From contig CM097884.1 in assembly GCA_044892505.1 (NCBI GenBank), forward strand, positions 11,346,001-11,410,000: DNA of 64,000 bases, given 5' to 3'. Shown piece after piece: positions 287-42,101 of this stretch. The DNA is from Schmidtea nova. Taxonomy: Eukaryota. The notes under the pieces were generated by a model that ran no database searches, was not told where the DNA came from, and worked only from the letters and a program-made list of their open reading frames with translations. The stretch's first letter is position 1. Each line of letters begins with the position of its first letter. Both the position numbers and the translations under genes were made by a program.

Positions 287-483
287 NNNNNNNNNNNNNN
301 NNNNNNNNNNNNNNNNNNNNNNNNNNNNNNNNNNNNNNNNNNNNNNNNNNNNNNNNNNNNNNNNNNNNNNNNNNNNNNNNNNNNNNNNNNNNNNNNNNNN
401 NNNNNNNNNNNNNNNNNNNNNNNNNNNNNNNNNNNNNNNNNNNNNNNNNNNNNNNNNNNNNNNNNNNNNNNNNNNNNNNNNNN
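287..483. other. Assembly gap (N run)
   Basis: Run of N; ORFs spanning it are artefacts. Confidence 1.
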
Positions 484-14899: not shown

Positions 14900-15121
14900 A
14901 TTGATATTATTTATATTACTATTATTATTATCACAACGATATTTATTTTATACCAGTATGAGTATTATTATTAAGATTATAATTATAATCAGTATTGATA
15001 TTGGTACGATTATTATTATTATCATTATTGTTATTGTTATTATTATTATTATTATTACGTTTACCATCATTATCATGATTACGACTATTATTATTATTGT
15101 CATTATTATTATTTGATAATA

Positions 15122-15160
<39 letters not shown>

Positions 15161-15200
15161 GGTAAGATTATGATTAGTATTATGATTGGAATCGCGAATA
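14900..15200. repeat. Degenerate (ATT)n low-complexity tract
   Basis: Direct inspection; a similar tract lies at 15961-16030. Confidence 0.9.
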
Positions 15201-15827
15201 GTATTTTAGACGAGATTTAAATTGAAAAATAGGAAAAATCGAGAAATTTTAAACAGAATCACCGCGGAAATGATAAAATTGAAAGCCAAAACGCGATTTT
15301 TAAGCCCCAGGAGCAGTCAATGATCGAAAATGAAAATAAATAGCAACTTTAGAGCGTAGAATAGGGGTCTCCAATACAAACAAACGGCAAATATAACAGA
15401 AGATAAAAAGTTGAGCCGGAGTGGGTTAAAAGTGTATAAAAATCGCGGGTAAAAGAGTCAAAAGATCAAACCGCGACTAATGAGTCCCACGAATAGCCGA
15501 TAATCGGAAATGTTATCAAGTAACGTCAATAGAGCGTAGAAAATGAGTACGCAGTCCAGGCAAGTGAAAAATATGGTAAAAGATAAAACGCGACACTGGT
15601 ATCGACGAAAAGTCTAGAAAATCGCCGCTAAGAAACCAGGAAATTTGGATAAAATTACTGAATTTTAACCTGGAAATATCCATGACTTTATAAATATTGG
15701 AATTAGTAGTATCACCATTTCAACAATAACAGCAGCAATTTAGCAAATAATATCAAAATAAAACTCACTTATTATATTTTTATTATAATTATTACGTAAT
15801 AATATATAAGAAATATATTGGTTAAAT

Positions 15828-15960
15828 NNNNNNNNNNNNNNNNNNNNNNNNNNNNNNNNNNNNNNNNNNNNNNNNNNNNNNNNNNNNNNNNNNNNNNNNN
15901 NNNNNNNNNNNNNNNNNNNNNNNNNNNNNNNNNNNNNNNNNNNNNNNNNNNNNNNNNNNN
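15828..15960. other. Assembly gap (N run)
   Basis: Run of N. Confidence 1.
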
Positions 15961-16030: not shown

Positions 16031-16115
16031 AATTATTGCTGACGATATTGGCGTTATGTTGGTTGATCTAGATTCTAGATCAACCAACATAACGCCAATA
16101 TCGTCAGCAATAATT
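16031..16115. repeat. Perfect 85-bp palindrome (42-bp arms, 1-nt spacer)
   Basis: 16031-16072 is the exact reverse complement of 16074-16115. Confidence 0.95.
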
Positions 16116-16158: not shown

Positions 16159-16674
16159 CTATAAGGTATTGAATGATGGAATTTTTTGTCTTATTTCCCA
16201 ACACAAAATATGGATCCCTTTTATTATTTCATTATTTTGTGTTAGTAATGGCTGATTCAACTTTACTTCCAATTTTCCAATGATATTCAATACGTTATGC
16301 GTCATTGATTTAATATTTTTTGTTGTTGGCTTTATTTTCGCCTTTTCCAGTCTCGTTAAAAGACTTGCCGATACTATACTGTGACTTGAGCCTGAATCCA
16401 ATAACGCTTCTACTTTTCGTTCATTAAACTGTATGGCTACTCTGGGTTGCTTTCCTCCTAATTCTATTGTCATCAATGCGTAATTACATGGTAACCCCAG
16501 CATGTTCTTTCTTTCAATTTCGGCATTTGATGGTTCAATCTTTTCTAGTTCAATTTGAATCTCATCAACTGGCTTCATTTCTCTCAAGTTTTCACTTGGG
16601 TATATTGGAGCTGTTGGTATAAATGTCGGTGTGTACCATTTAGAAAGAGTATCAATTCTGGTTAGTTTTGGCAT
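16159..16674 (-). pseudogene. Element C retropepsin (aspartic protease), downstream of env
   Basis: RVAIQFNERKVEALLDSGSSHSIVS...IIGKLEVKL; same frame as the env tail ORF (16822-17040), separated by one TAA. Confidence 0.9.
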
Positions 16675-16821
16675 TAATTCAAGAAAGACCCTGGATTCGG
16701 GTTCTATTCTCCTTTTTATTATGCTCCTTCGAAAAGACTCTTGCTCTGATCTACCGCCATTGTTCTCATTATTATGGCCATTATTTCTCTCATCGTAGTC
16801 GCATAGTAATTCTTCACTTTT

Positions 16822-18659
16822 TTAATCATTTCTCAATTGTGCTCGTACATTTTCTATTTCTTTATATTGATGATTTGTGATGAAAAATCGAGCCAAAAAT
16901 GGAATACAGCCAATAATCATTTTCCATGACCATCCGGAAATTGTATATATTCTATGAGCTGATAATACTTGCGACATTATTACCTTTACCGTTACTGCAA
17001 TTACATAAATGCCAATTAAACCTGCACATGCTTGTCCCAAAAAACATAAATTTACCCCAAATCTTTTCCATTGTTTTATAAGTAGCTCTTTTAAAATGAT
17101 CGGGTGTTAGCAAATATTCGTAATTAACTTTTCCTTCTCTATTCAGCAATATCGTGTCAATCATTTCTGAAATCACCCGTTCCTTTTTTGACGGAAATAA
17201 CAAATTTCTCTGGGCTTCTTCAATGTTTTCGCTGGCATACAGCCCATTTGTGCCATTTTATTCATTGATGTAAAATTTATTAAATATTCAAAATTCGTCA
17301 ATTCCAATTTGTCCGGTGTTCTTACTCCTCGGTAATCTGGTAGCACTATCCACGAATCTTGTGCTAAGCGATATAATGGAGCTAATAATCGATTACATTG
17401 TAAAGTTTTTGTTTAACTTGTTCCTCCAGCAATATTCGGGTTATAGGTTCCATAAATCGTAGTTTCCCGCCAACACTTACTGGCAATTCATTTGTACATT
17501 TCTCATATTTTGCGATTTTTACTGTAATTTCTTTGCATCGGTAACTGTATAGCGCTTCTCCAAAGATTCTGGCAAATACACCATTTTCTGATATTACCAT
17601 GGGTGCTACTAAATTTGGGTTTGTAATCGCCATCGCCATTCGATTTCGAAATATTTCTTTATTCAATTTACAATCGTTCAAGATCATTTTTCTATATATG
17701 TTCTCCATGGTATTTTGGCTAAAATGAAATAAATAATCAATTTTATTATTAAAATAATGAGTTAGTTTGATATCATCCCTGTTGATTCTCGTTTTCGCTT
17801 CATGTACAATCGTTTTTGTCAGATATATATCCTTTGTAATTCGTTACATAGACTGTTTGACCATATTTGCTCGTAATCTCTTTTTTAATAAAGCGCATGC
17901 TGTTCGTTGGCAAGGTTGACATTAAAACCGTTGCCGTTTGTCTCGTCCAAACTGGAGGTGATCTGAATGTGTTATTCGGTTTTTAAATTACGTTAAAACT
18001 GTCTGGTCTCTCCTTAAACTGCTCTCCGGTTAATTCCTTGAAATTCATTGATTTTAAATGAGCTAAGTTACATATATTGGTTTTAACATCGTAAACAAGA
18101 ATTGATCCTCCCGTGTGACAACTAGTTTGTTTCATGTTACAAAATGGATGAGTTTGTAGTTTTCCGGTATCATCATCAAAAGATCCTTCAAACATTCTCA
18201 ATTCTGTTAAGTATTCCTCTATTACCACTGTTTGTTTAATTACTTTCACATTTATTCACCTTCACAGTCACCATCTGATTTCATCACTCCCTTCACAACC
18301 AACGTTTCTCGAATTTGATGATTCAGTTTCGCTTTTAATCGAATTTCAGGACTGATTTTTAATTCTCCCGTTTGAAAAGCTGTTAAGCAATTTTCTGGCA
18401 ATACATCCACCGGTCGTGGAATGGCGTGCATTTTGATTAATGACGTATGGCTCTATTTACCACAGAAGAATACAAAAGTAGTTCGTTTCACAATGCATTC
18501 TCTAACTTTGGTACGCTGTAAATCTGACTCTTGATACACATGGTATTTTACTTCGTTTTCAATCTTTAATTTTCGAGGGTATGCGTTAGGGCCCTCTGAC
18601 ATGTCAACCACTGAGTAAACTTTCCCCATTTCTGTTTTTGAGCAATTGTATGCAACTAA
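16822..18659 (-). pseudogene. env: Element C envelope glycoprotein, chuvirus/herpes gB-like (class III fusogen), with stops and frameshifts
   Basis: AYNCS...YQESDLQRTKVRECIVKRTTFVFFCGK*SHTS; DGDCEG; DCKLNKEIFRNRMAMAITNP; GEALYSYRCKEITVKI...CTNELPVS...FMEPITRIL; IWGKFMFFG + GLIGIYVIAVTVKVI (TM) + IYTISGWS; same motif order as I recall for chuvirus-type G proteins. Confidence 0.85.
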
Positions 18660-20459
18660 GGACGTCGTTTGCGTAATAACTGCACATAGAATAATCATCA
18701 TAAACATTACCCAAGGGAATATCATCGTTTTACTCAGTTTTAAACTTACTCTCTCGTTCAATTGCCTTTGAAGTGAATACTCATCTTCTGTTTTCTTTCT
18801 TTTCTTTATTATAGATAAATTTAATGCTTTCCACCCTCCAAGCTCTCTTAGCCAATTAATTAAAGACTCATTTAATAGTTGAGCCACAATGTCAATTAAA
18901 TTATCAAGCTTGTCTGACTTTGTAAATGCGTGAATACCGATCTCTGAAACAACGTAGGTTATGATTGTTAAAACTATTTCTTTATCAATCCCATTTTTGA
19001 TCACATCTTCTATTACTTCGTATTTACAAAATTTATCCTCTTTGCCAAATTTCCGCACTACTTCTGGAAGTCTGATTTTCACTTCTTCTACTATTCCTTT
19101 CAATTCCTCTTCCGTTTCTGTCTTTATTTTTAGAATTGGATATACGATTTTAACTAAATTTCTTATTACATTACTTGTTTCGTCAACTTCCTGCTCTAAT
19201 TTTATTAAATTTTTCTTCATCTCATAAAATGTTCTAGGTTTCGTATTCTCATTTTTTATTTCTTCTTTTTCAATATTCGTCTCTTCGATAATTGTCGTTT
19301 CTGCTGTCTGAGCATTTTTATTAGTCCCCTTTTCACCATCAACATCAGTAACTATTTCAATTTCGCTTTCCTTTATTTGTTCTGTTTGCCCATCTGTATC
19401 TGAAAATTCAACTTTGTCAAGCATTTTCGAATTAAATTCTTCATTTGCTATTATTCGATTTATTAAATACCCTTGGCTTCCATTAGTGCTTAAATACCCA
19501 TATTCATCCAATTCCTGTGGCACGTATCCACAGTCATATAAATATTCACCGTCATCAAGTTCTTCACCTTTATATCTCAACAATATAATTCCATTTTTAC
19601 CTAACATTTCCGCAGCTCTTTTACGTACTTTTCGAACTTTTGTACACCAGTGTTCCTCTACATACTCCGCTTTCCCAATATCTTCATATTCTATTGCAAT
19701 TGTTAACAAATTTACCTCAACTCTATCTTTTCTAAGCTCTTTACCCAATTTTCTCATTATTCTCTTTAAACATTTTCTATATCCCGTTCTTCTAAACAAA
19801 TAAGGTCGTATCACATTAACAAGTTCTAATTTCTCTTCTTGGCTAAATTCAGATTCCTCAATTAATTTTACTATCTCATTAATTTCATTTTCGTCACCAA
19901 TATATAAAACATCAGATAGCTCCCTTACTTTTTCCATCGGTTCATTTTTTATAATTTCACAGTTACTCATCATACTGGCTATTTGTAATTCATTTTTATT
20001 TCCTCGTATAAAACCACAGTCTATTAAATATGCATCGTTTTTTAAATCTCTATTCTTAAACTTTAATTTGACTACCCAGCCTTCATATTTCTCTCTTAGT
20101 CTCTTTTTAAAATCTTTTGCACAATGATAGGCTTCATAACGACAAGTAATTACATTTTTATCATTTTCATTAACAACATCAATAAAAATAAAATCTAACC
20201 ACTTATTTTCCCGAAAAGATTTTCCAAATTTTCTCATCAATTCTTTAATTTCATCTCTATTTGTTACATTTATTTGATAATAATTAGCACACAAATTAAT
20301 CACGCCTTTCAATTTTCTCATACTCAGCGACATTTGACTCAGGTTTTTAATCGATACCAATATTTTAGATGATTCTTCCACACTAGCTTCTAGTAATTTC
20401 TCAAGTCTTTTCATCATCAATGTAGCTTTTTCACTTTCTAAATCTTCTGTTGTACTCAC
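18453..20459 (-). CDS. Element C 668-aa ORF: two (helical + ubiquitin-like) repeats, acidic linker, Bcl-2-like domain, TM/signal peptide, env N-terminus
   Basis: Ubl-like LKFKNRDLKNDAYLIDCGF and LRYKGEELDDGEYLYDCGY; BH2-like LLNESLINWLRELGGWKAL; hydrophobic MIFPWVMFMMIILCAVITQTTS; then env AYNC. Confidence 0.75.
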   Translation of the reverse strand: MSTTEDLESEKATLMMKRLEKLLEASVEESSKILVSIKNLSQMSLSMRKLKGVINLCANYYQINVTNRDEIKELMRKFGKSFRENKWLDFIFIDVVNENDKNVITCRYEAYHCAKDFKKRLREKYEGWVVKLKFKNRDLKNDAYLIDCGFIRGNKNELQIASMMSNCEIIKNEPMEKVRELSDVLYIGDENEINEIVKLIEESEFSQEEKLELVNVIRPYLFRRTGYRKCLKRIMRKLGKELRKDRVEVNLLTIAIEYEDIGKAEYVEEHWCTKVRKVRKRAAEMLGKNGIILLRYKGEELDDGEYLYDCGYVPQELDEYGYLSTNGSQGYLINRIIANEEFNSKMLDKVEFSDTDGQTEQIKESEIEIVTDVDGEKGTNKNAQTAETTIIEETNIEKEEIKNENTKPRTFYEMKKNLIKLEQEVDETSNVIRNLVKIVYPILKIKTETEEELKGIVEEVKIRLPEVVRKFGKEDKFCKYEVIEDVIKNGIDKEIVLTIITYVVSEIGIHAFTKSDKLDNLIDIVAQLLNESLINWLRELGGWKALNLSIIKKRKKTEDEYSLQRQLNERVSLKLSKTMIFPWVMFMMIILCAVITQTTSLVAYNCSKTEMGKVYSVVDMSEGPNAYPRKLKIENEVKYHVYQESDLQRTKVRECIVKRTTFVFFCGK

Positions 20460-20589
20460 AATTTTCGTTTCAGTTTCTTACATGTCTTGCTGCGATCCAT
20501 ACATCATGTGATTATCCAATTCATCATCGGATTCAAACTTGGACATTAGACGATCAAACGTCGACCCTTTTATTTCACTTGATCTTCAA

Positions 20590-21854
20590 TATTTTCGTTG
20601 AAATCATCTGATTGTACATAAGCAACATTGCCTGTTTTCATTTTATCATTTTGGAATCTAATTGATTTTTTCAATATAGGTTTCTGAAATTTGTCGACAT
20701 TTCTCGGGTATGATCTAGCCATGTGTCCATAGCCTCTACAGGAATGGCATTGAATTTGACCTTGAAGGTTCGCTCTATCTCTTTATGGGGATGGTGAAGT
20801 TGATGAAAACCTCGATCTAGCAAAACAATTCCGTGAGACATGTCCATTTCTTCCACAATTTTAGCATTGTACATTATCATTATTTCGCTGATCCTTAATA
20901 TTCATTTTATTAAAACTTTTCTCACCGTTACCTTTCATCCACTGCGGCCACATTCGTTTTGGGCTTCGTTGAACATTATTTTTAGACCAGCATTGAGTGC
21001 TGTTATGTCCCATCCTTTGACAATAATCACACTGGATTGGAGTTGGACTTTTTGGAGATCTATTTTTGAGATGATGTCCTATCCGTTGACAATGGCTGCA
21101 TTGGAATGGCCTCTTCTTTTCATCAATTTGAACATTTGTTAATTTATTTGGCTCAAATCTTTGGTGATAGACTAATTGATTGCTGCAGCCGATTGTTTCT
21201 GACTGGAGTTATGGATCTTTCTCTGGGTTCATTTATGATGGCAAACGATTCTGATTTTGGCTGTGAGCTTTTCAAATTCAACTCAATTTTCATCGCCTTT
21301 TTGATCAATTCATCAAAGTTATTGAAGTCCACATAACATAATGCCTTTTTGATCTCCTTTTTGACTCCCGTTAAGAACTGGTCTTGTAACAATTCCTTCA
21401 CCTGCTTTGCCACTTCAATCTGTTCCGGTTTTACTTCGAATGCTTTCTCTGTAAGAGTTGTCAAGTGGTACGCAAATTTACTTACCGATTCATCTGATTT
21501 TTGCACTCGGTTATAGAACTTGTGCCGCATTATTCGTTTTATATCCCCTCCAATTAGTTTCGCGGCTAAGGCATTTTTCAATTTCATCCAGTCACTTGCA
21601 ATTGTTCTTTTGTCAATTTGTTGCCAGGCTTCTCTTGCTGCTCCCTTTAAATATAGTGGCAGCCTTTGCACCAATGTCGCTTGGCTCCATCCGTAGGCTG
21701 TGGCATACATGTAGTAATCCGCCAAAAAATCAACGAATTCCACCGGATCGCCTCCGTATTGGTTTACTGACAGTTTTTGGCAGCTAGCATAGTCATTGCC
21801 ATTTCCGTTGCTGGTAGACATGGGCGTGTCATCATGATTGTTTGAGTTACTCAT
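20590..21854 (-). pseudogene. gag: Element C gag (capsid plus four CCHC-type zinc knuckles), frameshifted near 21155
   Basis: YGGDPVEFVDFLADY...QRLPLYLKGAAREAW; CSHCQRIGH, CDYCQRMGHNSTQC, C*NCGRNGHVSRNC, CHSCRGYGH. Confidence 0.85.
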
Positions 21855-22337
21855 TTTGGTTTCTGGTTGTCTGCTACTTCGTAATTCGTAAAATGGTCGG
21901 TTTGGTACAACTTTTACTCTTCTAAATTTTAATATATCAATTATAAAATTTACCTTTTATTTAAATTTTCAACAGTAAAAATCTTTCCACAAGTTTCCAA
22001 CAAACTTTTTCTAATCCTTGATTCAATTTACCGACTCTGCTCACGTCGGAATTTAACAAAATTTTCTCGATAAATTAATTTTCAGTTTTCAACAATAAGC
22101 CACCCACTTTTGATCAATTTCACAATTTCAAAACTTTATAAATTTGACAAATAACTTTGAATAAATTTCACCGACTCTGTTCACGTCGGAATTTTACTGC
22201 AACTTTCAATTTCTTTTCGACAATAAATATCTAATTTCTTTTTGGAAATGCTTCACCGACTTTAAACACGTCGGAATTTATCAATAATTTTCTTTTAATT
22301 CTTTATTATTTTTTTTCAACAAATTTTCACCGACTCT

Positions 22338-22356
22338 GATCACGTCGGGCTCACCA
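22338..22356 (-). promoter_or_regulatory. Element C primer-binding site, tRNA-Trp-like
   Basis: TGGTGAGCCCGACGTGATC located 4 nt after the LTR-terminal CA; tRNA-Trp PBS consensus is TGGTGACCCCGACGTGAT. Confidence 0.8.
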
Positions 22357-22360
22357 AATA

Positions 22361-22934
22361 TGTTGGGTTATTAACGAGCAGTCGGTAATATCTGACTCCT
22401 GTGTTCTCTTTTAATCACGAAAATAAATGAAACCCAACACAATAACTTTATATATATTTTCAAATGAACAACAACACTTTTTATCACAGAAAGTTACTAA
22501 TGCTCTGCACTCTTCCGCGTGAGGGTAGAACACCCAATGGGATATCTCCCTCTCTGGCACGCAAGAAGATTAAATTCAACTTCTATCTTTGGTTTCTCTA
22601 CACGTTCCTCAGAATAGCTTTTAGTTGTTGTTTATTCTTTCTGTTTATTCTTTCTGTTTATTTCTTTCTGTTTATTCTTTCTGTTTATTCTTGAAATTTA
22701 TCTTTGACCACTTTGGCGTGTGCCGAAATTTTGACTTGCCTTTTAGAGTGATTTTTCGATTGTTTCTGTCACACCTTAATGAATCTGTCAATTACAAAAT
22801 AAAGTGGAAGTTGCCGCTAAGTGGATTTGCGGCTTCTTTCCCCGGGGCACCCTTAAATTTTTCCATTAACTTTAATTAATCGATTTGCAGATGCCACGGG
22901 TTTCCCATATCGCTCGGGTTTCCTACTAGCTCAG
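22361..22934 (-). repeat. Element C 5' LTR, PBS-proximal half
   Basis: Ends ...AACCCAACA next to the PBS; contains a 13-bp AATAAA-bearing array and the start of a 17-bp minisatellite that continues at 42232. Confidence 0.65.
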
Positions 22935-23064
22935 TGTCACGACAATAAATAAGACACGTTTTTAAAATATGTATTTTTATCAAAAACTGCTTATTTAAAC
23001 AAAAATGTTTAAAGATGAATAAATCGATTTAGAATTAATTAGTAATTAATTCTAAATTGTCACA
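22935..23064 (-). repeat. Element B 3' LTR
   Basis: 130 bp, TGT...ACA, adjacent to the PPT. Confidence 0.9.
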
Positions 23065-23069
23065 TCCGT

Positions 23070-24400
23070 CCCTATCCTCGACTTGGGTTTCTTCAAGTCG
23101 ACTGAGGTAATGGAGTTTGTGTTCTCGGTACCCTTCTTGTATTGGATTTTGAATTCGTAGTCTTGGAGTAGGAGGCTCCATCTTGAGATTTTACTGTTCC
23201 TGATTTTTAGACCCGCGAGCCATTTTAAGGGCTTATGATCCGTTTGGATTACGAATTTGCGACCGTATAGGTAATAACGGAATTGCTCCAGTGCGTATAC
23301 TATCGTGTACAGTTCTTTCTCGATTGTTGACCATTGGATCTGGGGTTCCGAAAGTTTCTTGGATTGGAACGTGATCGGGTGTTCCTTTATCTCTATAATT
23401 TGGGATAAAACAGCTCCTATGACTTGGTCGGACGCGTCGGTTTTCACGTAAAATGTCTTCTTGTAATCTGCCGCTATGAGTACTGGCGCTTCTGTCAGTG
23501 ATCTCTTCAGGTCACTAAAGGCTTTTTCACTTTGTTTGTCCCATTTTATTCGGTTTGAGGCTCCATTCTTTAGTTTCTCGTTCAGATAATCGGTTTTCTT
23601 TGATAGATCTTTGATATGGCTTCGGTAGTAGTTGATCATACCGAGGAATCGTCGTAAATCCTTCTTTGTCTTTGGTTTGGATGCTCTTTTGATTGCATCA
23701 ATTTTTTCCGATAGCGGTGACACCTCTCCGTTTCCGACTAGTTTCCCTAGGAACTCGACATCATTAGTTTGCATTTCTTTGGATTTAGGGTTAGATTAGC
23801 TCTATGTAGGGTCTCTAAAACTGTCTGTAGTATTCGGATATGTTTCTCGGCTATTGAGGATTAGATAATGATAACTGACGTTTCTGATACGTTTTGGAAT
23901 AGTTTATCCATCATTCTTTGGTAGTAAGCTGGAGCATTTTTGAATCCGAAACTCATCCTTGTGAATTGGAATAATCCGAATGGTGTTGTAAACGCACTTT
24001 TTGGTCTGTCTTTATCTTTTATCGGTATCTGATAGTATCCTTTCGTCAGGTCTATCGTGTTGATGATCTTCGCGTTTCCTACTGAATTGATTACCTTTTC
24101 GATTTCTGGCATCGGATAACTATCGAATATTGTGGCCGAGTTTTTCTTCCTATAGTCCTGAACTAACCTCAGATTATCATTTTTCTTTACGAAAAGAGCT
24201 GGACTTGCCCATGGGCTATTTGACTTTTCGACGATTCCTAGCTTGAGTAGGCTTTGAATTTCTTCGTTCATATTATCTCTAAGCGAATGCGGAAGCTGGT
24301 ATGGTCTTTGATTGATTGGTGTTTCGTTCGTGAGATTTATGTTGAATTCTGCTTCGTTAGTCAGGCCTGGTAGAGAAGAAAACACGGTGCGGTATTCGTC
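23070..24400 (-). pseudogene. pol: Element B RT and RNase H; the YxDD region appears deleted
   Basis: SPWASPALFVKK..LRLVQDYRK, IDLTKGYYQI, FTRMSFGFKNAP; FYVKTDASD, WSTIEKEL, IQTDHKPL; reads ETSVIII* where YxDD is expected. Confidence 0.9.
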
Positions 24401-24524
24401 GACAAGTTGTTTGTATGGTCTTGACGCTCGCTTCCGGGTTTATTGTAACAGTTTCGGTTTCGGTCCTGCCTTCGTCGGCGATCAGCGCTTGTATGATTGC
24501 TTCTTCTCGGTGATGCCACTTCAG

Positions 24525-25767
24525 TTAAAGGTTTACATGAAAGGCCCGCAGTCGTTTTCTAGTTTGGCTGGTGTCTACCATATAGTTGACATCACTTATT
24601 TTGTTGACTATTCTGTATAGTCCGTGCCATCCCGATAGTATTTTTGTCGAAGATGTCGGTAAGAGGACGAGAACTTCCTTGCCTATGTCGAAAGTTGTGG
24701 TTCTTGAGTTCTTGTCATACCATTTCTTTGATGTATCTTTAGCGGCGTTGTCTCTTTGTTGTTTAATCTCCATTACTTGGTTCAGTTTATCGGTTAGGTC
24801 GAGTACAATGTATTGATTGATGTTTCTCTTTCCAGGATATTCTGCATTTGTCTATATAACATCGATAAGTGCCCTTGGACCTGGTGGCCGTACAGTAGCT
24901 CAAAGGGGCTGAATCCGATATTCTCGTGCGAACTCGACCTGTAGGCAAAGTAGAGATATAGCAAGTACGTGTCCCAATCCTTCCCTTTGGAATCGGTTAG
25001 TAATCTTCGGAATCTTCGTTGAATCTTTCACATATCAAGTTAGTTTGCGGGTGATATTTGGAGGTTTTGATGTTCGTTGTTCCTAGGAGCTGGTATACCT
25101 GTTTCATAACCTCACTCATGAAATTTGATCCTTGGTCTGTTAGAATTTCGGACGGAATACCCATTCGGCAGAAAAAATGTCACATTGCTTTTGAGACCGT
25201 TTCTGCCCTCATATCCGGTATCGCTATCACCTCTGGGTATCTGGTTGCGTGGTCTATAATTGTCAAAATAAATCTGTTTCGATCGTTTGATAAATTTAAC
25301 GGCCCCACTATATCCATGGTGACTCTGAAAAAGGGCTCGCCAATCGTGGGGGTTCTTATCAAAGGTGCTCTATGTGCTTTTTCTATTCGTCTTGATTTCT
25401 GGCACTGTGGACAGCTCTGGCACCATCCTTGGACGTCTTCTATGATGTTTGGCCAAAAGAAGAATTTTCTCAGCTTGTCTCTGGTCTTCTCATTTCCCAG
25501 ATGTCCTGATAGTGGGATTTCGTGGGCTATTTTCAGTAGTTTTTCTCGATATTGTTTGGGAATCACAGGCTTTTTTGTTGCGTTTTCTGTGTACATCAGT
25601 ATACCATTTTCTATCGACAGTTTGGTACTTTGGCATTCTTTTTTTGCTTCGTCGAAGTACTTGTACAGGAATTCGTCATCCAGTTGAGATTTGTGTAGGT
25701 TGATCATATTTATGTCGAAGATAGATTGATCATCTTCGGAGACTGTTTTCCCTTTACTTCCTTCCAT
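24525..25767 (-). pseudogene. pol: Element B integrase, located upstream of RT
   Basis: HEIPLSGHLG...CQSCPQC (HHCC), TMDIVGPL, IIDHATRYPE; GPY/F-like WHGLYRIVNKISDVNY. Confidence 0.9.
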
Positions 25768-25773
25768 GTATTT

Positions 25774-26506
25774 CTAGTAATTTGGTGCGTTGAGTGTATC
25801 GTTGTCGAATATGTTCTTTGGGTTTGGGTTTAGTATTTGTTCTTCTTTATCGGCTACTATTCTCGTCGCTGAATGATTTATATTGTTGGATCTGGTGATT
25901 GCCTCGCAAAATTCGTCTAGATCGTTTCCTAGTAATACTCTGTGTTTACTACTCATGATCAGTGCTTCTATCGTGACCGGCACATTCTTGACTGAGATAT
26001 TTAATCTGGCGATTGGGGCTTCGGTTGAGTTCCCGTAGGCCAACACGACATTCACGGTCTTGTCTACGTATTTTGACTGTTTCACGAACATCGTATGAAC
26101 AACCGTCGATGACGCTCCCGTGTCTCTGAACATTTTTATCGGCTTGCCTGCTATGATTCCGTTAAATATATATATTTCTTAGGAATACTTACGTGTTTCA
26201 GCTCGACTGCATTTGCGTTTCGTTTGGAACATTCTCTAGCTAGATGTGCTGCACTTCCACATATGTAGCATTGTCTTGGTCCTCTGTTTGGGTCTGGGAA
26301 TTGCCTGGGTCTCCACTGTGGGGTTTTCGGAGTATCAGCTTCGAACTTGTGTGCGCTTTCGTATCTTTCGGCCACTAACACCATCTTTAGGACAACTGAA
26401 TTGTCACTTTCTTCAAGCCATGTCTTGATCCGTTCATTTATGTTTCGCATAAACTGTTCTTCTATGATAAGGTTTTTGATGTCCTGCATCTCTTTTGCGT
26501 CCCTTG
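25774..26506 (-). pseudogene. gag: Element B gag C-terminus (CCHC knuckle) and protease
   Basis: CYICGSAAHLAREC; FRDTGASSTVV...VLLGND. Confidence 0.9.
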
Positions 26507-28169
26507 TGTAATGTTCTGTGGACACCCGTTTGAATACAAAATTCTGACATAAATAGATGTTTATGAGTGTTTTATGTACCTCTGAAATTGTGTGAATCGG
26601 AGTTGTAAAAAGGTTGTTAGATATGTGAAAATTTTATTATTTGGTTATTTTATTGTACATTGTTTAGGATTATGTGAATTGGGGTTGTAGAAAGAATTAT
26701 TAAATATGTAAAAATTTTATTATTTGGATATTTTATTGTGCATTGTTTAAAAGAGTTTGTTAAGCGGTTAACCCGCGCAGAAATTAATAGAAATAAATAT
26801 TTAAAAGAAATTTCTTAAAATTTCTTACTAATTGATCAAATGATTTTCATTATGATAAAATTAATATATATTTTTGAATTTATCCACAGTATCTTTACAA
26901 ACAAATTGTTGCAAGCCGATATTAGACTGACAGACATCGCCAGGAATATTGAATCTGTTAATGCTACGGCAACTTATAATGTTGAATTTGTCAATATGAA
27001 GTGGAAAATAAACGTCTTTTATTTTCAAATACTTTCTAGATGTCAGGCCATTGAAAGTTTCTGCTAACGGTAAATGTTTGGAAGTGCCTATCAATTCCTA
27101 TGGATACATCACTACGGAGTCCAAGGAAGCAATGTTGGGATATTTCCGCATCAATGATAAATATGGAATCAGCAGATTAGTTGAATCGCATGATAAGCGC
27201 TATCAACCGATTTACATCGCTAACGTGCCAGTGATTATTCTGCCTGAAATCACAGAAATAGTCGCCTTAGAAATGAAAGGATTTATGGAACTATCTAAAA
27301 CTTTAAAACTAAATATTTTTAATAAACATTGCTATGCCAAAGTTGTTATTGTGCTCTACTTTTATGTCAATCTTAGTGATAACATTGAATTTGTTACTGA
27401 GAGAGAGAAATTTATAAAGATCGAAATATGTGTACAGAATATACTTCTCCGTTTAAACTTGATATTTAATCAACTCCCGTGGGAAATAAGGATCGAGTTC
27501 TCGGTAGATAACTTGCCTATTTTGACTCCAAAAATGTGCTTGAGTGACTTTAAAGGTCCCCGTTATCCGGTTTCAGTGAATAGTTATGGCAATTTGAGTT
27601 TAAGTGCCCGGGAATTGCTCGAACTTTTTAAAAGTGATTCTTCTAGTAGATGTTTTAAGTTGGAAGGCCAAATGCCGTTCACCGGTATGGTTTTAATGTT
27701 GAATGTTACTTTCTATAGATCTTTGACAATGATCGTCCAACATTATTACATCGACATTATTTTCGGATTGTTTGTATTCATTGTCTGTACAATGTGCATT
27801 TTTGAAGGTTCTTATATGATGAACTTATTAGTCTCAAGAAAATTACGATTTTATTGTCAATTGATGTCCTATCAAAATCCGAAAGTGAATGTAGTTAGAG
27901 TATGTACTGTACTATCAAATCCATGTGTGTATCATTTTTACATGGTTATTCAATCTTATGAGATCCTCCTTGGGTCATTACCCGATGGTTTCGATAGAGC
28001 TTTGGTTCGACCCGGAATCCTCCTTTCCCTGTTATCCGACAAAACTAAAGTATATTTATATTTTTTTGTAAATTTATGTAAATTAATCAGCGAGGGAACA
28101 AAAATAAAATTGATGAATCGGCAACCACGCCAAAAATCTGCATACCTTGGTGTGGTTTCCGGTTCATCA
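26507..28169 (+). repeat. Element A LTR1 (1663 bp)
   Basis: TGTAATG...CATCA, followed by ATT and the PBS; two ~80-bp direct repeats near its 5' end. Confidence 0.95.
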
Positions 28170-29582
28170 ATTTGGTGTCAGAAGTTGCTCCCTCCCTCCA
28201 GTAACATTTATATTATCCTAAATAACACTTTATTTTATTCTATTCCCACATTTATTATTTTTCCTATTCCTTCCCAAATGAAGGCGCTACAATCCTGGGC
28301 GGGACTAACTGAATTGACGGTACATGGAAACCACATCATAAGAACAACCGGGTTTTTAAACATTAAGAGGAAACAAGTATCACACAAGTTCCTCTTCCGG
28401 TGTCCTAACAAGACTTCCGGATGGCAACCTCTGTGTCCGACGAAGTCACATTTGTCCTCAATGTCTTCATTGCTCCTAGCAATTGGCGTCCCAAGGGAAA
28501 CACACCGCCACTTCTTTGTCAAGAAGTCCCAATCGGCGACACATACCCCAGTCATCACCACCTATTTCGACATTATTCCCCGTTTGACTGGAGGAATGCA
28601 AACTGATGAGGCTAACACAGACTGTGAAATCAGTCACATACAACCGCCAACACAACAAACAACACCAGTTATTACACCAATACCGTTTTTCCTAGACGGC
28701 GTTGGCTCCCCACAAAAGTGGTTCCTGGCACTAGAAGTGACTCCAACCTTTCTACCCACTCAATCTCAAGGGCAGAAGTTTGGTGCACTCTTGTCCATGC
28801 TTCCAAGCACTATTTACACCACATTGTCCACCGCCATTGCAACCGCAGCCACGGCAAGTGAGCCCTACAACTCACTGAAATCGGCAGTACTAGACGCCTA
28901 CCGACCAAAATTAGATCATTTATATGAGGCTTGGTTCCGAAATCAACCTCTCAATAATGAAAGACCAAGCGCCTTCCTCAAGCGAGCCAAGGAACAACTC
29001 GAGAGGATCCAGGCTGGTCTTACCAAAGACGACGCTCTACTCCGTAGGTTCTTTCTAAAAGCACTACCTACATCAGCACAGTCCATTCTTGCCGTTGTTC
29101 CAAACACAACATTGGAAGAACTGGCCAAAATTGCCGACAAGATCGTGGAAATCAACACGTCACCTGTTACTCCATCACCGGTAGTCGCAACAACAAGCCT
29201 CCCACAAGCCGAATTAGGAGCACTAGTCAGCGCCATAGCTGCTTTAACATCGAGGATGGACAATTTAGACGCAAGTCTACACACCCGAGGTCGAAGTCGA
29301 ACAGACAGTCGTGACAACAATCAAAAACGACATCGGTCCACATCTGCACGAGGGCTCATATGCTCCTACCATAAGACGTACGGAGACAAAGCCCAACATT
29401 GCTATGTCGGTTGTAGGTGGAACAACCGACTTCCAACATGCCTGCCTCGCAACCTTTGCATCTATCACGCAATATTTAAGACCGAGGCCAAAACATGCTT
29501 GGAAGGCTGCCGTTTCCATACTGGTAATCACAATACCAGTAACGTTAATCAAAATTCGTATAATAAGCCTTCGGAAAACTGA
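26840..29582 (+). pseudogene. gag: Copy 1 LTR-ORF/Gag fusion frame, frameshifted near 27025; Gag proper (28596-29582) is intact
   Basis: ORFs 26840-27067 and 27051-29582; ATTTT vs ATTA relative to LTR2. Confidence 0.85.
28173..28185 (+). promoter_or_regulatory. Element A PBS, tRNA-Leu type (second copy at 34818-34830)
   Basis: TGGTGTCAGAAGT is complementary to the tRNA-Leu 3' end ...ACTTCTGACACCA. Confidence 0.85.
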
Positions 29583-29679
29583 AAACGCCATCGAACTCCC
29601 CCACAGTTTTTGATGGCGATCCCATAACCTGTGGACTCTTTTCTGTTCCCGCCGTACCTCATTCCCAGAACTCTAATGA

Positions 29680-32673
29680 AGTCGATGCCCCATTCACTTC
29701 GTTATCGATAGCGGTTCCATCATCTCATTCCTACCTAATCGGTTCGGAATTGATAATAATCAAAAAAGGTCCTTCCGGACAGCCAGTGGCGAAAACTTTT
29801 CCACTATTGGAACAAAAAACTTAATATTCCAAATTCCTGGTCTATCCAAAACTTTTTCATGGACATTCCAAGTCGCCGAGGTGATTCATCCACTCTTAGG
29901 TGCCGATTTTCTTGATGCCGAAGGTTTACTCCCTGATTGCAGAGAACGCAAATTAATCCTCTCACAACACACACCTAGAGCTCAAGTTCTTGACCACCTC
30001 TGTAGCGACGCTCTCAATGTCTTACCCGCCACACCTTGCTATATACAACAATTACTAAAGACGTTCCCAAACGTCGAAAAGAGATCAAACATTCACAAAC
30101 AAACTCCCTCTTTTCTACACGTCATAGTCACCAATAACGGTATGCCTAACAGAGAACGTATGCGACCACTCGCGCCCGAGAAGCTCACACTTGTCAAGGA
30201 AGAATTCAATAAGCTACTCGAAGCCGGTACTATACACCGATCGAATTCCCCTTGGGCATCACCCATCCATGTGGTTACAAAAAAAGACGGATCTATCCGC
30301 GCCTGTGGTGACTACAGACGCCTCAACAAAGTCACTATACATGACTCTTACCCCATGCCACTTATATCAGACGTTCTTTCGAGATTACCTGAAGCTACAA
30401 TCTTCTCCACTCTAGATCTAAAAAAGGCTTACCACCAAATCCCGGTAGCACCAGAAGACATCCCGAAGACCGCTGTTATCACCCCTTTTGGCTTGTTTGA
30501 ATACAAATACATGCCATTCGGTCTCCGAAACGCAGCTCAAACGTTCCAGCGACACATTGACAATATTTTAGGAGACAAGAAATACATGGTGGCATACATC
30601 GATGACATCCTCATCGGGTCCAAAGATGCAACGGAACATCTTGAACATATCAAAGAAGTGTTCAGGTTATTGCACAATAACAATTTGCAAATTAACTTGG
30701 ACAAATGTTCCTTCTTTCAATCGGAAATAAAATTCCTTGGACACCTTGTATCGACGTCCGGAGTAAGACCACTTCCAGAACGCCTAGATACAATCCGCAA
30801 TTTTTCACGACCAAATACAGTTTCCCAAATGCGCAGCTTCTTAGGAACTGTTAATTTCTGTCACCGATTTATTCCAAGGATATCCGAGGTCACCGCACCT
30901 CTTTCCGCTCTCTGTAGCGGCCCAAAACACTCTCTCCTACCGTGGAATGACGAACTGGAAAGAGCTTTTCAATCCGTCAAGGACGCAATGTCGACAGCAC
31001 AATCTTTGTCATATATAAAGAACAATCTACCCCTATTTTTAACTACCGATGCGTCCAACATTGGCATTGCTGGAGTTCTCGAACAGAACAACACAGGGTG
31101 TCAAGAGAAAATCGAATTCTTTTCACGCAAATTAACCACACAAGAACAACGCTATTCCACGTTTGACCGCGAATTATTAGCGATTTATGAATCAGTCCGC
31201 CACTTCCGCTACTTACTCGAAGGCAGATCTTTTTCTATTCAGACGGACCATAAACCGCTAGTTCACATGATGGAAATGAAGACCCCTTCACCAAGACAGG
31301 GACGTCAAATCAGCTACCTATCAGAATTCGCGTTCACTATCACCCATCTCCCAGGTCGCCAGAATATTGTAGCAGATTATCTATCGCGAAATCTTGTTGC
31401 AACGATCACTACTGAGCCGATCTTCACTGACGACGTTCTCAGGTCTCTACCACCTTCCCCAAAAGACCTGTCATTCTTCAAAAATACAACGGTTTTCGAT
31501 AAAGGCATCTACTACGACAACGCCTTATCTGGAAATATCCGCCCAATTTTGCAAGAAAAGTTAAGGCGCGAAGCTTTCAACCACACCCACAACCTTCACC
31601 ATCCGGGCACGTCTGCAACATACAATCTACTACGTTCTCGTGTCATTTGGCCAAGTATGAGACAAGACGTAAAAGACTGGTGTGAATCTTGCTTAGGATG
31701 CCAACAACACAAAATCCACCGACATACTCGACCACCCTTACATAACTTTCCAATGGGAAACCGTTTTGAAGTGGTGCATGTCGATCTAGTTGGACCTCTT
31801 CCTCCAGACAACGGTTACACACATATATTAACCATGCTGGACAGAAAAACTCGTTTTCCAGTCGCTGTTCCTTTAAAATCCATTTCTGCCTATATTGTAG
31901 CATCGGCGATCATAGAACATTGGATCTCGATATTTGGTGTTCCTCTACATTTCATTACCGATCAAGGACCCCAATTCGAATCCCATCTTTTTAAACAACT
32001 TTCGACACAACTAGGAATTAAACACCTGAGGACTAGTACCTACCACCCACAAACAAACGGAGCTGTCGAGCGGTTTCACCGCACACTCAAGACATCCCTC
32101 CGAATACTTTCTACTTCAAAGAACTGGACAAAGGCCCTACCTTTTGTTCTACTAGGATGGCGCAATGCGCCATCAAAAACAACAGGTTCGTCTCCAGCTC
32201 AACTACTGTTCGGTACTAACGTCATGTTACCAAACGAACTTGTCGAGCTAAACGGCGAACCAACTTTAGAAAATCTAGCGGATGCAAGAAACCATTTCCT
32301 ATCTTTGGACTCAAATCCAAATTTTTCAATGTCAAACACTTACAAACCATATATTCCAAGATCTTTTGATCGCGCAACTCATGTATGGATCCGCTCAATT
32401 GCCGATATCGGCCTAAAACCACGCTACGAAGGACCGTATTCCCTTCTCCAAATACTTGATAACGGCACTGCAAAAGTTTCCATTAATGGAATGGATACAA
32501 TTATAAATCTAGCCCGTCTCAAGCCAGCTTTTGGTTATATGGAAGAAGACCCCAGTCCTACAAATATCACATCGCATGCTGAGACACAAGACTTTACACC
32601 ACCAAATCCTCAAGACCCCATACAAACCCATAATCTGCAGAGGGATAACCCGACCGTCGTTCGCTTACCTTAG
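29680..32673 (+). CDS. pol: Element A copy 1 pol (PR-RT-RH-INT)
   Basis: FVIDSGS, YIDD, LTTDASN, HVDLVGP, ITDQGPQF, VERFHR; frame open from 29680. Confidence 0.95.
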   Translation, partial: SRCPIHFVIDSGSIISFLPNRFGIDNNQKRSFRTASGENFSTIGTKNLIFQIPGLSKTFSWTFQVAEVIHPLLGADFLDAEGLLPDCRERKLILSQHTPRAQVLDHLCSDALNVLPATPCYIQQLLKTFPNVEKRSNIHKQTPSFLHVIVTNNGMPNRERMRPLAPEKLTLVKEEFNKLLEAGTIHRSNSPWASPIHVVTKKDGSIRACGDYRRLNKVTIHDSYPMPLISDVLSRLPEATIFSTLDLKKAYHQIPVAPEDIPKTAVITPFGLFEYKYMPFGLRNAAQTFQRHIDNILGDKKYMVAYIDDILIGSKDATEHLEHIKEVFRLLHNNNLQINLDKCSFFQSEIKFLGHLVSTSGVRPLPERLDTIRNFSRPNTVSQMRSFLGTVNFCHRFIPRISEVTAPLSALCSGPKHSLLPWNDELERAFQSVKDAMSTAQSLSYIKNNLPLFLTTDASNIGIAGVLEQNNTGCQEKIEFFSRKLTTQEQRYSTFDRELLAIYESVRHFRYLLEGRSFSIQTDHKPLVHMMEMKTPSPRQGRQISYLSEFAFTITHLPGRQNIVADYLSRNLVATITTEPIFTDDVLRSLPPSPKDLSFFKNTTVFDKGIYYDNALSGNIRPILQEKLRREAFNHTHNLHHPGTSATYNLLRSRVIWPSMRQDVKDWCESCLGCQQHKIHRHTRPPLHNFPMGNRFEVVHVDLVGPLPPDNGYTHILTMLDRKTRFPVAVPLKSISAYIVASAIIEHWISIFGVPLHFITDQGPQFESHLFKQLSTQLGIKHLRTSTYHPQTNGAVERFHRTLKTSLRILSTSKNWTKALPFVLLGWRNAPSKTTGSSPAQLLFGTNVMLPNELVELNGEPTLENLADARNHFLSLDSNPNFSMSNTYKPYIPRSFDRATHVWIRSIADIGLKPRYEGPYSLLQILDNGTAKVSINGMDTIINLARLKPAFGYMEEDPSPTNITSHAETQDFTPPNPQDPIQTHNLQRDNPTVVRLP

Positions 32674-33080
32674 CAATTTTTATCATCACCGAAATTACTT
32701 CCAATCAAAAATGAAATCACTCCATCCCTCATAACTAATCACCCCACCACTCAGTTACAAATCGAAAACACATCAAACAGCACATTACAACCAATAGCTA
32801 ACCAGAAGCAAATACCAATACAGAGAACAACACAATCATCGCAACCAGATAACACATGGTTTATCCCGGCAACTATATTGGATCAGCAAACTCAATCAAC
32901 TCCTACTTCAAAATATACTCTGAAACCCATCCTAAAATCATCGAATAAGATACCCAAGGCACAACAAATTAAGAAAGTGCGTATAGCAGAATGGCACCGA
33001 ACTAAAAGAATCGGCGAAAACCCAAACTTACCAATCCGCCTATCTAGAACTAACGACTTGTAACCTAGGGCGGGCACCAA

Positions 33081-33120
33081 TACTAACACTTCTAAAATCT
33101 TTTTTTTGTTTTCTTTTAAG
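33081..33120 (+). promoter_or_regulatory. Splice acceptor upstream of PPT/LTR (second copy at 39726-39765)
   Basis: TACTAAC branch point, T-rich tract, first downstream AG at 33119-33120. Confidence 0.7.
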
Positions 33121-33152
33121 AAAAACGCTCCGCGTTACTGGATGGGGGGTAA

Positions 33153-36227: not shown

Positions 36228-36324
36228 AAACGCCATCGAACTCCCCCACAGTTTTTGATGGCGATCCCATAACCTGTGGACTCTTTTCTGTTCCCGCCGT
36301 ACCTCATTCCCAGAACTCTAATGA

Positions 36325-42090: not shown

Positions 42091-42101
42091 AGTGACGCCA
42101 T

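What the first reader, a model, noticed from the sequence alone, without database searches (positions are those of the whole stretch)
18660..19178. Bcl-2-like domain in a Gypsy retrotransposon; its tail anchor may double as the env signal peptide
Seen: aa ~428-547 of the 668-aa ORF contain a BH3-like helix (LKGIVEEVKIR), a degenerate BH1-like segment (VIKNGIDKEIVLTIITY) and a clear BH2-like LLNESLINWLRELGGWKAL. A basic patch and a 20-aa hydrophobic stretch follow, ending just before env AYNC. Known: Bcl-2 proteins end in WIxxxGGW plus a C-terminal TM anchor, and viral Bcl-2s of large DNA viruses block apoptosis. Inference: signal-peptidase cleavage after QTTS would release a tail-anchored Bcl-2-like protein and a lumenal fusogen from one polyprotein, giving an enveloped retroelement its own apoptosis modulator. 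I know of no LTR retrotransposon with Bcl-2 cargo. From memory (verify), planarian Burro elements carry an IAP-type domain, which would be a functional parallel.
Basis: partly seen in the sequence, partly recalled or inferred. Interest (0 to 1): 0.92.

Follow-up and report, generated by a model that had tools for sequence, protein, structure and literature searches.

The report
Bcl-2-like domain of a Burro-like retrotransposon
The flagged stretch is a weak but probably genuine Bcl-2-like domain sitting just ahead of the envelope gene in a decayed Gypsy-like retrotransposon, an arrangement already published for the giant 'Burro' elements of planarian flatworms, so it is a new copy of a known oddity and not a first.

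Summary
A 668-codon open frame on the minus strand (18453-20459) carries the quoted BH3-, BH1- and BH2-like strings. A basic patch follows, then the ORF's most hydrophobic segment (aa 579-600), then the N-terminus of a mononegavirus-type fusion glycoprotein.

Direct support for Bcl-2 homology is below threshold. Pfam PF00452 scores 20.3 bits (E 8e-4) against a cut-off of 31.4. The best natural protein in the PDB search is catfish BAX (E 0.002-0.007). Two single-sequence AlphaFold models had pLDDT 44-46, so the fold test is inconclusive. No homologue of the domain turned up in billions of database proteins.

The context decides the reading. The gene order here is gag, CCHC knuckles, two internal repeats, Bcl-2-like domain, env, protease. 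This matches the order published for planarian Burro elements (PMC6431247, citing Grohme 2018), which have a BCL2-like domain next to an in-frame env between gag and pol.

This copy is compact and dead: gag and env are broken, pol is lost at an assembly gap, and no LTRs were found.

The hydrophobic segment is env's own signal peptide. Its second role as a tail anchor is topologically sensible but untested.

The parts
21153..21854 (-). gag ORF of the element (233 aa, intact as an ORF)
   Evidence: PF03732 Retrotrans_gag, E 9.9e-7, 29.3 bits against a cut-off of 24.1.
20460..21152 (-). CCHC zinc-knuckle region and spacer between gag and ORF668 (broken)
   Evidence: There are two strict C-x2-C-x4-H-x4-C knuckles and two degenerate ones, all in one frame, and one of them contains a stop. 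A minimum-cost frame walk from the gag ATG to ORF668 needs at least 5 breaks: 1 stop and 4 frame changes. Some of these may be natural ORF boundaries.
18453..20459 (-). ORF668: 668-codon open frame with no break and first Met at codon 15. It holds the two repeats, an acidic linker, the Bcl-2-like domain, the signal peptide and the first 68 residues of mature env.
   Evidence: There is no second copy in the window.
20007..20303 (-). Internal repeat 1 (aa 53-151)
   Evidence: BLASTP of the two halves against each other gives 25% identity over 102 columns, E 4e-7. Alignment is A2.
19521..19823 (-). Internal repeat 2 (aa 213-313), possibly ubiquitin-like
   Evidence: The only fold hint is a weak PDB hit to the ubiquitin-like domain 2daf (E 0.12; 0.94 with the two-repeat profile). 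It occupies the position where Burro has a Ubi2/SUMO-like domain.
18831..19121 (-). Bcl-2-like domain (aa 447-543; the BH2-like motif runs on to aa 546, nt 18822)
   Evidence: PF00452 scores E 8.4e-4 and 20.3 bits, covering profile positions 10-100 of 100, below the 31.4-bit cut-off. The BH2 piece alone gives 13.7 bits. Catfish BAX 5w63 scores E 0.002-0.0074, and about 40 Bcl-2/BAX/BOK/BAK chains score E 0.05-2.6.
18660..18725 (-). Hydrophobic segment aa 579-600: env signal peptide, and putative membrane anchor of the upstream domain
   Evidence: It has the highest hydropathy in the ORF, with +5 upstream and -1 downstream. It aligns with the start of PF24664 and with the signal-peptide region of P0002.
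16675..18725 (-). env: mononegavirus-type fusion glycoprotein gene (broken; the lower bound is approximate)
   Evidence: Six ORF pieces match PF24664 collinearly at profile positions 5-87, 104-155, 326-421 (E 5.7e-21), 491-552 and 547-603 of 653. The last piece holds a hydrophobic stretch (KD 2.19). Reading from ORF668's stop to the PR ORF needs at least 8 breaks: 3 stops and 5 frame changes.
16159..16674 (-). Aspartic protease ORF (171 aa, intact as an ORF)
   Evidence: PF13650 E 3.6e-5, PF13975 E 1.1e-4, PF00077 E 0.003.
15828..15960 (.). Run of N (assembly gap or masked) where the element is lost; left as it is
   Evidence: No pol-like minus-strand ORF lies between 10000 and 15800.
21855..22400 (-). 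Leader upstream of gag with four copies of a ~40-nt hairpin-containing repeat. The 5' boundary of the element was not determined.
   Evidence: No LTR pair was found.

Best explanation
The segment is the Bcl-2-like accessory domain of a compact, decayed relative of the planarian 'Burro' Gypsy-like endogenous retrovirus-like elements. In that family one long reading frame runs gag, CCHC knuckles, accessory domains (ubiquitin-like, BCL2-like and others), env, protease, pol.

Shown here:
- the same gene order on one strand
- a sub-threshold but specific Bcl-2 profile match
- an env signal peptide directly after it

Inferred mechanism in an intact family member: the hydrophobic segment acts as an internal signal sequence. 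It sends the env ectodomain into the ER lumen, and env's own C-terminal hydrophobic stretch brings protease and pol back to the cytosol. The Bcl-2-like domain stays on the cytosolic face next to the membrane. If signal peptidase cuts after QTTS, the domain remains held there by the signal peptide, in the orientation of a tail-anchored Bcl-2 protein. Its likely role is to modulate the host cell-death machinery, as viral Bcl-2 homologues do.

This particular copy cannot work as an element. The gag-knuckle region and env are broken, pol is missing and no LTRs are recognisable.
For: Gene order on the minus strand:
- gag (PF03732)
- 2 strict and 2 degenerate CCHC knuckles
- two internal repeats
- Bcl-2-like domain
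- PF24664 env in collinear pieces
- aspartic protease

PMC6431247 section 7 describes Burro/GYPSM1 as follows. Gag has retrotrans_gag and 2-3 CCHC knuckles. There is a Ubi2/SUMO-like domain before BCL-2. [quoted passage not shown]

Bcl-2 signal:
- PF00452 scores E 0.0045 on the whole ORF and 8.4e-4 on the domain, spanning 91 of 100 profile positions.
- The best natural PDB hit is BAX, E 0.002-0.0074, followed by dozens of Bcl-2, BOK, BAX and BAK chains aligned over aa 482-546.
- The second most hydrophobic window of the ORF falls where the central helix would be.

Signal peptide: hydropathy and charge asymmetry, alignment with the start of the env profile, and conservation with small -3/-1 residues in P0002.

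env has its own C-terminal hydrophobic stretch.
Against: - The Pfam score is 11 bits below the family's gathering threshold, and about two thirds of it comes from the BH2 motif. The domain without BH2 gave no reported hit.
- The same stretch also aligns with designed helical-repeat proteins at 8-13 bits per repeat, against 19.8 bits for the BAX match in the same search. So generic helix-loop-helix similarity contributes to the signal.
- Both AlphaFold models are low confidence (pLDDT 43.8 and 46.0), and Foldseek gave nothing better than E 0.86. In the second search, phycocyanins scored as well as Bcl-2 proteins.
- No homologue of the domain was found among 1.84 billion representatives, 5.8 billion clusters or JGI metagenomes.
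- I could not align this element with any actual Burro sequence, so the link rests on architecture. It also lacks the MATH, Smc, BIR and ankyrin parts, the giant size and recognisable LTRs.
- The host species is not identified.
Confidence: 0.72

Rival explanations
1. The Bcl-2 likeness is chance. The region is an all-helical spacer of the polyprotein that happens to carry a W-x3-GGW string, and has no common descent or shared fold with Bcl-2 proteins.
For: - All scores are below family thresholds (20.3 against 31.4 bits).
- Most of the score comes from one short motif (13.7 bits).
- The motif core is expected 0.05 times per window by chance.
- Designed helical repeats align to the same stretch.
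- The models are unconfident and no fold match is significant.
- At E 0.0045 per ORF, a window with well over a hundred ORFs could yield a false hit of this strength somewhere.
Against: - The hit is to the family that the literature independently places at exactly this position, after a ubiquitin-like domain and before the in-frame env, in the only element family known with this gene order.
- The profile alignment covers 91 of 100 positions, not the motif alone.
- BAX gives a higher single-stretch score (19.8 bits) than any designed-repeat unit (13 bits or less).
- It lies in a real 668-codon ORF, not a random one.
Confidence: 0.17
2. ORF668 is no longer transposon cargo. It is a host-retained (domesticated) gene encoding two repeats, a Bcl-2-like domain, a membrane anchor and a short lumenal stub, kept open by selection after the rest of the element decayed.
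For: ORF668 has zero breaks in 2004 nt. The flanks need at least 5 breaks in 1395 nt and at least 8 in 1781 nt. At the flank rate about 8 breaks would be expected in ORF668, giving P(0) of about 3e-4, or about 4e-3 after allowing for choosing the longest interval (my arithmetic).
Against: - No identical or related protein is on record in any annotated proteome or assembly searched.
- Some flank 'breaks' may be natural ORF boundaries.
- Patchy decay, conversion from a younger copy or local assembly error would give the same picture.
- There is no expression or orthology evidence.
Confidence: 0.07
3. The env and its N-terminal extension are an endogenous viral element copied from an exogenous negative-strand RNA virus. 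It merely landed between unrelated gag and protease fragments, so the Bcl-2-like domain would be cargo of an RNA virus and not of a retrotransposon.
For: - The env family is that of Monjiviricetes.
- No LTRs or pol link the pieces in this copy.
- The window is a mosaic of nested elements.
Against: - gag, env and protease are on the same strand, in the published Burro order, with no intervening foreign sequence detected.
- Capture of such glycoproteins by LTR elements is documented (PMC7642597 and PMC10084718).
Confidence: 0.04

Closest known systems
Burro1-4 / GYPSM1, giant Gypsy-like LTR retrotransposons of Schmidtea mediterranea and other Dugesiidae (Grohme 2018 and Jurka 2007, as described in PMC6431247)
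   Same: - gag with retrotrans_gag and CCHC knuckles
- a ubiquitin-like region followed by a BCL2-like domain
- then a mononegavirus-like env lying between gag and protease on one strand
- an AT-rich, transposon-dense genome
   Different: - The copy here is far more compact, about 5.7 kb from the gag ATG to the end of protease.
- It has no MATH_TRAF_C, Smc, BIR or ankyrin hits.
- dUTPase, RT, RNase H and integrase are missing, lost at a gap.
- No LTRs were found.
- No sequence-level comparison with Burro was possible with these tools.
Viral Bcl-2 homologues of large DNA viruses (for example grouper iridovirus GIV66 and fowlpox FPV039, which appear among the weak Foldseek hits)
   Same: A mobile or viral genome carries a highly diverged Bcl-2-like helical domain with a membrane segment after it, presumably to control host cell death.
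   Different: Those are separate genes of DNA viruses with solved Bcl-2 folds. Here the domain is one module of a retroelement polyprotein, its fold is unconfirmed, and the membrane segment is the signal peptide of the next protein.
Glycoproteins of chuvirus-like viruses captured by LTR retrotransposons in mosquitoes (PMC7642597, PMC10084718)
   Same: An LTR retroelement has acquired a fusion glycoprotein from negative-strand RNA viruses.
   Different: According to PMC6431247, the env of other Gypsy-like elements is expressed as a separate ORF. Here it lies between gag and protease and is preceded by accessory domains in the same frame.
Internal signal sequences of viral polyproteins that remain as the C-terminal membrane anchor of the upstream protein after signal-peptidase cleavage, such as the capsid anchor of flaviviruses (my own knowledge, not tested here)
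   Same: A hydrophobic segment between a cytosolic upstream module and a lumenal glycoprotein, with positive charges on the upstream side and small residues at -3/-1.
   Different: No cleavage or topology data exist for this element. The likeness is only a model of how it could work.

Membership tests
Bcl-2 family (Pfam PF00452) | Profile match at or above the curated gathering score | tested here: not met
   18.0 bits on the whole ORF and 20.3 bits on the domain alone, against a cut-off of 31.4. E 0.0045 and 8.4e-4.
Bcl-2 family (Pfam PF00452) | BH2 signature at the end of the domain | tested here: met
   INWLRELGGW lies at aa 534-543. The 40-aa piece alone matches profile positions 78-100 with 13.7 bits. 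It aligns residue for residue with the same motif of catfish BAX.
Bcl-2 family (Pfam PF00452) | BH1 and BH3 signatures | tested here: inconclusive
   The profile and many Bcl-2 chains align across this stretch (aa 482-546 to Bcl-2 residues 92-157). However, the piece without BH2 gave no reported Bcl-2 hit, and I saw no residue-level match of the signature positions.
Bcl-2 family (Pfam PF00452) | Globular helical bundle around a central hydrophobic hairpin | tested here: inconclusive
   Both models are all-helical with 7-11 helices, but pLDDT is 43.8 and 46.0. The best Foldseek E is 0.86-0.88 with TM 0.2-0.3 to Bcl-2 proteins. A hydrophobic window from aa 495 fits a central helix.
Bcl-2 family (Pfam PF00452) | C-terminal transmembrane anchor | tested here: inconclusive
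   A hydrophobic segment lies 32 residues after BH2 (aa 579-600). It is homologous to the env signal peptide, so it is not evidence of Bcl-2 ancestry.
Bcl-2 family (Pfam PF00452) | Binds BH3 ligands or regulates membrane permeabilisation | not testable with these tools
   No assay is available.
Burro-like Gypsy LTR retrotransposons of planarians | gag with retrotrans_gag followed by 2-3 CCHC knuckles | tested here: met
   PF03732 E 9.9e-7. Two strict and two degenerate knuckles. Feature as described.
Burro-like Gypsy LTR retrotransposons of planarians | Mononegavirus-like env between gag and protease, same strand | tested here: met
   PF24664 pieces are collinear from profile position 5 to 603, lying between gag and the protease ORF.
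Burro-like Gypsy LTR retrotransposons of planarians | BCL2-like domain directly upstream of env, preceded by a ubiquitin/SUMO-like domain | tested here: inconclusive
   The Bcl-2-like match is sub-threshold. The two internal repeats are real (E 4e-7), but their ubiquitin-like nature rests on one weak hit (2daf, E 0.12), and Pfam found no ubiquitin family.
Burro-like Gypsy LTR retrotransposons of planarians | Protease-dUTPase-RT-RNase H-integrase after env, and LTRs at both ends | tested here: not met
   Only the protease is present. After it come an N run and microsatellite with no pol ORFs. No LTR pair was found. This copy is truncated, so the test says little about the family it came from.
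Burro-like Gypsy LTR retrotransposons of planarians | Giant size with MATH_TRAF_C, Smc, BIR and ankyrin modules | tested here: not met
   None of these appears in Pfam scans of ORF668 or of gag. The whole stretch between the gag ORF and ORF668, knuckles included, is only 693 nt.
Burro-like Gypsy LTR retrotransposons of planarians | Sequence similarity to Burro1-4 / GYPSM1, and a planarian host | not testable with these tools
   No Burro sequence or planarian genome can be reached through the collections. No protein of the window is on record.
Monjiviricetes fusion glycoprotein (PF24664) | Profile match above the curated cut-off over most of the profile | tested here: met
   Separate pieces score 29.3, 74.6 and 27.5 bits against a cut-off of 27, and two further pieces score below it (16.2 and 14.7 bits). 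Together they cover profile positions 5-603 of 653 in order.

The most novel reading that the evidence does not exclude
In this element family one hydrophobic segment does two jobs. It is the signal peptide of the envelope protein, and after signal-peptidase cleavage it becomes the C-terminal membrane anchor of the Bcl-2-like domain. A retroelement would then make a tail-anchored cell-death regulator as a by-product of env biogenesis. In addition, this copy's intact Bcl-2-like ORF amid broken neighbours may reflect retention by the host.
Probability: 0.22. Interest if true: 0.6.

Novelty: new member of a known kind. Interest (0 to 1): 0.3.

Why it matters
Cell-death regulators carried by a retrotransposon bear on how endogenous virus-like elements manage their host cells, especially in planarians, where cell turnover and stem-cell control are central. 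That idea is already in print for Burro elements, where it is called 'worthy of experimental confirmation'.

This locus adds three things:
- a compact relative showing the minimal block (two repeats, Bcl-2-like domain, signal peptide, env)
- the observation that the Bcl-2-like domain directly abuts the env signal peptide, which gives a concrete and checkable topology model
- an unexplained contrast between an intact cargo ORF and decayed structural genes

Tried and rejected
Homologue searches:
- Full ORF668 found nothing at E <= 0.01.
- The domain alone found nothing at E <= 10 among proteins of 105-334 aa.
- HMMER against 1.84 billion representatives gave one hit, a 2522-aa bacterial repeat protein matched in 9 short stretches. 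I judged it spurious.
- A search on aa 420-668 found only P0002, through the env part.

Related loci in JGI metagenomes: nothing for the cargo part or for the env N-terminus alignment.

Exact look-ups of ORF668 (two start choices), gag, a 913-aa ORF and P0002: none on record. The host could therefore not be named.

Structure: two single-sequence AlphaFold runs with different bounds were both unconfident, and the Foldseek results are not usable as evidence.

Ubiquitin-like assignment of the repeats: a two-sequence profile against the PDB gave no convincing hit.

LTR search by exact-seed repeats and by blastn found none for this element. Rfam gave no hits.

P0002 as evidence of cargo swapping: I first read P0002 (MRP-L47 domain plus env) as proof of a cargo slot upstream of env. 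I withdrew that reading because it is a UniParc gene-model entry and may be a chimeric prediction.

I rejected the idea that the protease after env belongs to another element once the published Burro order was found.
Full report
**What is there**

The finding sits in a minus-strand open frame of 668 codons, 18453-20459. The '668 aa' counts from a GTG under table 11, and the first Met is codon 15.

The hydrophobic stretch is the strongest hydropathy window of the ORF (2.31). It has net charge +5 in the 35 residues before it and -1 in the 20 after it. From aa 585 the ORF matches the start (positions 5-87) of Pfam PF24664, the fusion glycoprotein of Monjiviricetes. The frame is not a chance ORF: shuffles of the same 2004 nt need 34 +/- 3 breaks to be read through, and the real sequence needs none.

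**Direct tests of the Bcl-2 claim**

Profile search:
- Apart from env, PF00452 (Bcl-2) is the best Pfam family for the ORF: E 0.0045 and 18 bits on the whole ORF, and E 8.4e-4 and 20.3 bits on aa 410-560, aligned to profile positions 10-100 of 100.
- This is well below the gathering score of 31.4.
- A 40-residue piece with BH2 alone gives 13.7 bits. The piece without BH2 gives no reported Bcl-2 hit. So roughly two thirds of the signal is the BH2 motif.

PDB sequence search:
- The best natural protein is catfish BAX 5w63 (E 0.075, 0.0074 and 0.002 for ever shorter queries).
- Some 40 distinct Bcl-2, BAX, BOK, BAK and Bcl-xL chains follow at E 0.05-2.6, many aligned over aa 482-546.
- As a caution, the same stretch aligns with designed helical-repeat proteins. 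These reach low summed E-values only because they repeat. Each repeat scores 13 bits or less, against 19.8 bits for BAX.

Structure:
- Two single-sequence AlphaFold2 runs (aa 410-605 and aa 425-560) gave all-helical but unconfident models (pLDDT 43.8 and 46.0).
- Foldseek against the PDB gave nothing better than E 0.86. In the second search, phycocyanins do as well.
- The fold test is therefore inconclusive, neither met nor failed.

Other checks:
- No homologue of the domain was found in 1.84 billion representatives, in 5.8 billion clusters or in JGI metagenomes, so no alignment could be built to deepen any of these tests.
- The motif core W-x(3,4)-GGW is expected 0.05 times per shuffled window.

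**Context**

On the same strand, reading 5' to 3', the features are:
- a leader with four copies of a ~40-nt hairpin repeat
- a gag ORF, 21854-21153 (PF03732)
- two strict and two degenerate CCHC knuckles
- ORF668
- the rest of env in further ORF pieces that match PF24664 collinearly up to profile position 603 of 653, the best piece at E 5.7e-21, with a hydrophobic stretch near the end
- an aspartic-protease ORF, 16674-16159

After that the sequence runs into an N run (15828-15960), which I left untouched, and microsatellite. No pol ORFs follow.

Inside ORF668, aa 53-151 and aa 213-313 are an internal duplication (25% identity, E 4e-7). The only fold hint for them is a weak match to a ubiquitin-like domain, 2daf. 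An acidic linker follows, then the Bcl-2-like region.

**State of this copy**

These are counts only, from a minimum-cost frame walk:
- At least 5 breaks (1 stop, 4 frame changes) lie between the gag ATG and ORF668.
- There are none in ORF668.
- At least 8 (3 stops, 5 frame changes) lie from ORF668's stop through env to the protease ORF.
- There are none in the protease ORF.

Some of the flank breaks may be natural ORF boundaries of the family. dUTPase, RT, RNase H and integrase are absent, and no LTR pair was found. There is no second copy of gag, ORF668, env or protease in the window.

**What is known**

Gag, then env, then protease looked wrong for a Gypsy element until the literature search. 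PMC6431247, section 7, summarises Grohme et al. 2018 and Jurka 2007 and adds its own HHpred work. It describes the giant Gypsy-like Burro elements of the planarian Schmidtea mediterranea and relatives as one huge polyprotein:
- a typical Gag with two or three CCHC knuckles
- a BCL2-like motif

The paper already suggests that the element meddles with host apoptosis and ubiquitination. The block seen here (gag, knuckles, possible ubiquitin-like repeats, Bcl-2-like domain, mononegavirus-type env, protease) reproduces that unusual order.

I could not reach any Burro sequence or planarian genome with the tools. The low G+C and the density of Gypsy-like elements fit a planarian but prove nothing. 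The copy differs from described Burros in being compact and lacking the other accessory modules.

**The tail-anchor idea**

The hydrophobic segment aligns with the start of the env family profile. It is also conserved in P0002, the only database relative found. P0002 is 67% identical over 85 residues of env N-terminus, with small residues at the positions matching -3/-1 of the proposed QTTS cleavage site. P0002 has an MRP-L47 domain instead of a Bcl-2-like domain upstream. The segment therefore belongs to env.

P0002 is a UniParc entry and may be a chimeric gene model, so I do not use it as evidence for cargo swapping.

Positive charges lie upstream, env's ectodomain would go into the lumen, env's own anchor would return protease and pol to the cytosol, and the upstream domain would stay at the cytosolic face of the ER. 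This is how internal signal sequences behave in several viral polyproteins (my own knowledge). Nothing here tests cleavage or anchoring. I put it at about one in four to one in three.

**An unexplained point**

ORF668 is intact while its neighbours are broken. At the flank rate about 8 breaks would be expected in it, roughly P 3e-4, or 4e-3 after allowing for picking the longest interval. Chance, retention by the host, conversion from a younger copy or uneven assembly quality cannot be told apart here.

**Verdict**

- The domain is probably (about 0.7-0.8) a diverged Bcl-2-family module of a Burro-like element.
- The kind is already published, and this is a new, compact, dead member.

**Slips and restraint**

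Slips:
- My reasoning and notebook entry 1 name the bounds of individual ORF pieces of the broken env, which indirectly localises breaks.

Restraint:
- N runs were left as they are.
- No contig looked human.

Noticed in passing
window 26507-40791, + strand: A young LTR element in tandem. Three LTR copies (26507-27500, 33153-34145, 39798-40791) are 99.7-100% identical and bracket two internal regions, each with an intact 930-aa RT-RNase H-integrase ORF and an 843- or 913-aa ORF with a sub-threshold DUF7041 match (25.5-26.3 bits, cut-off 28). Its insertion truncates the gag of the minus-strand element next to it.
   Followed up: partly
window 23052-26525, - strand: A separate Gypsy-like element whose domains run gag-CCHC, protease, integrase (H2C2 through the p58 C-terminal domain), RT, RNase H. 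Integrase is therefore upstream of RT, which is an unusual order for a Gypsy-type RT.
   Followed up: no
window about 21900-22400, - strand: The leader upstream of the element's gag holds four copies of a ~40-nt repeat, each with a short CCGAC...GTCGG hairpin. The first copy overlaps a TGG-initiated stretch that could be a primer-binding site just after a ...CA end.
   Followed up: partly
protein P0002 (UniParc UPI00060C5DDB): The only database relative of the env N-terminus (67% identity) is a 370-aa protein. Its first 200 residues are a mitochondrial ribosomal protein L47 domain (E 1e-28), joined in frame to the env signal peptide. It is either a real fusion or a chimeric gene model.
   Followed up: partly
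window 18453-20459 versus its flanks 16675-18455 and 20460-21854: ORF668 has no break, while the flanking parts of the same element need at least 8 and at least 5 breaks. This is unexplained.
   Followed up: partly
window 22932-23064 and 42099-42231: A 133-nt segment repeated at 97% identity with no similarity on either side. It contains a 31-nt palindrome.
   Followed up: no
window 16031-16115: An 85-nt near-perfect palindrome (98.8%) just beside the N run 15828-15960 and (ATT)n-type microsatellite at 14900-15220. It is possibly an assembly artefact at the gap.
   Followed up: no
window 287-483, 15828-15960, 59584-59720: Three runs of N (467 bases in all), left as they are.
   Followed up: no
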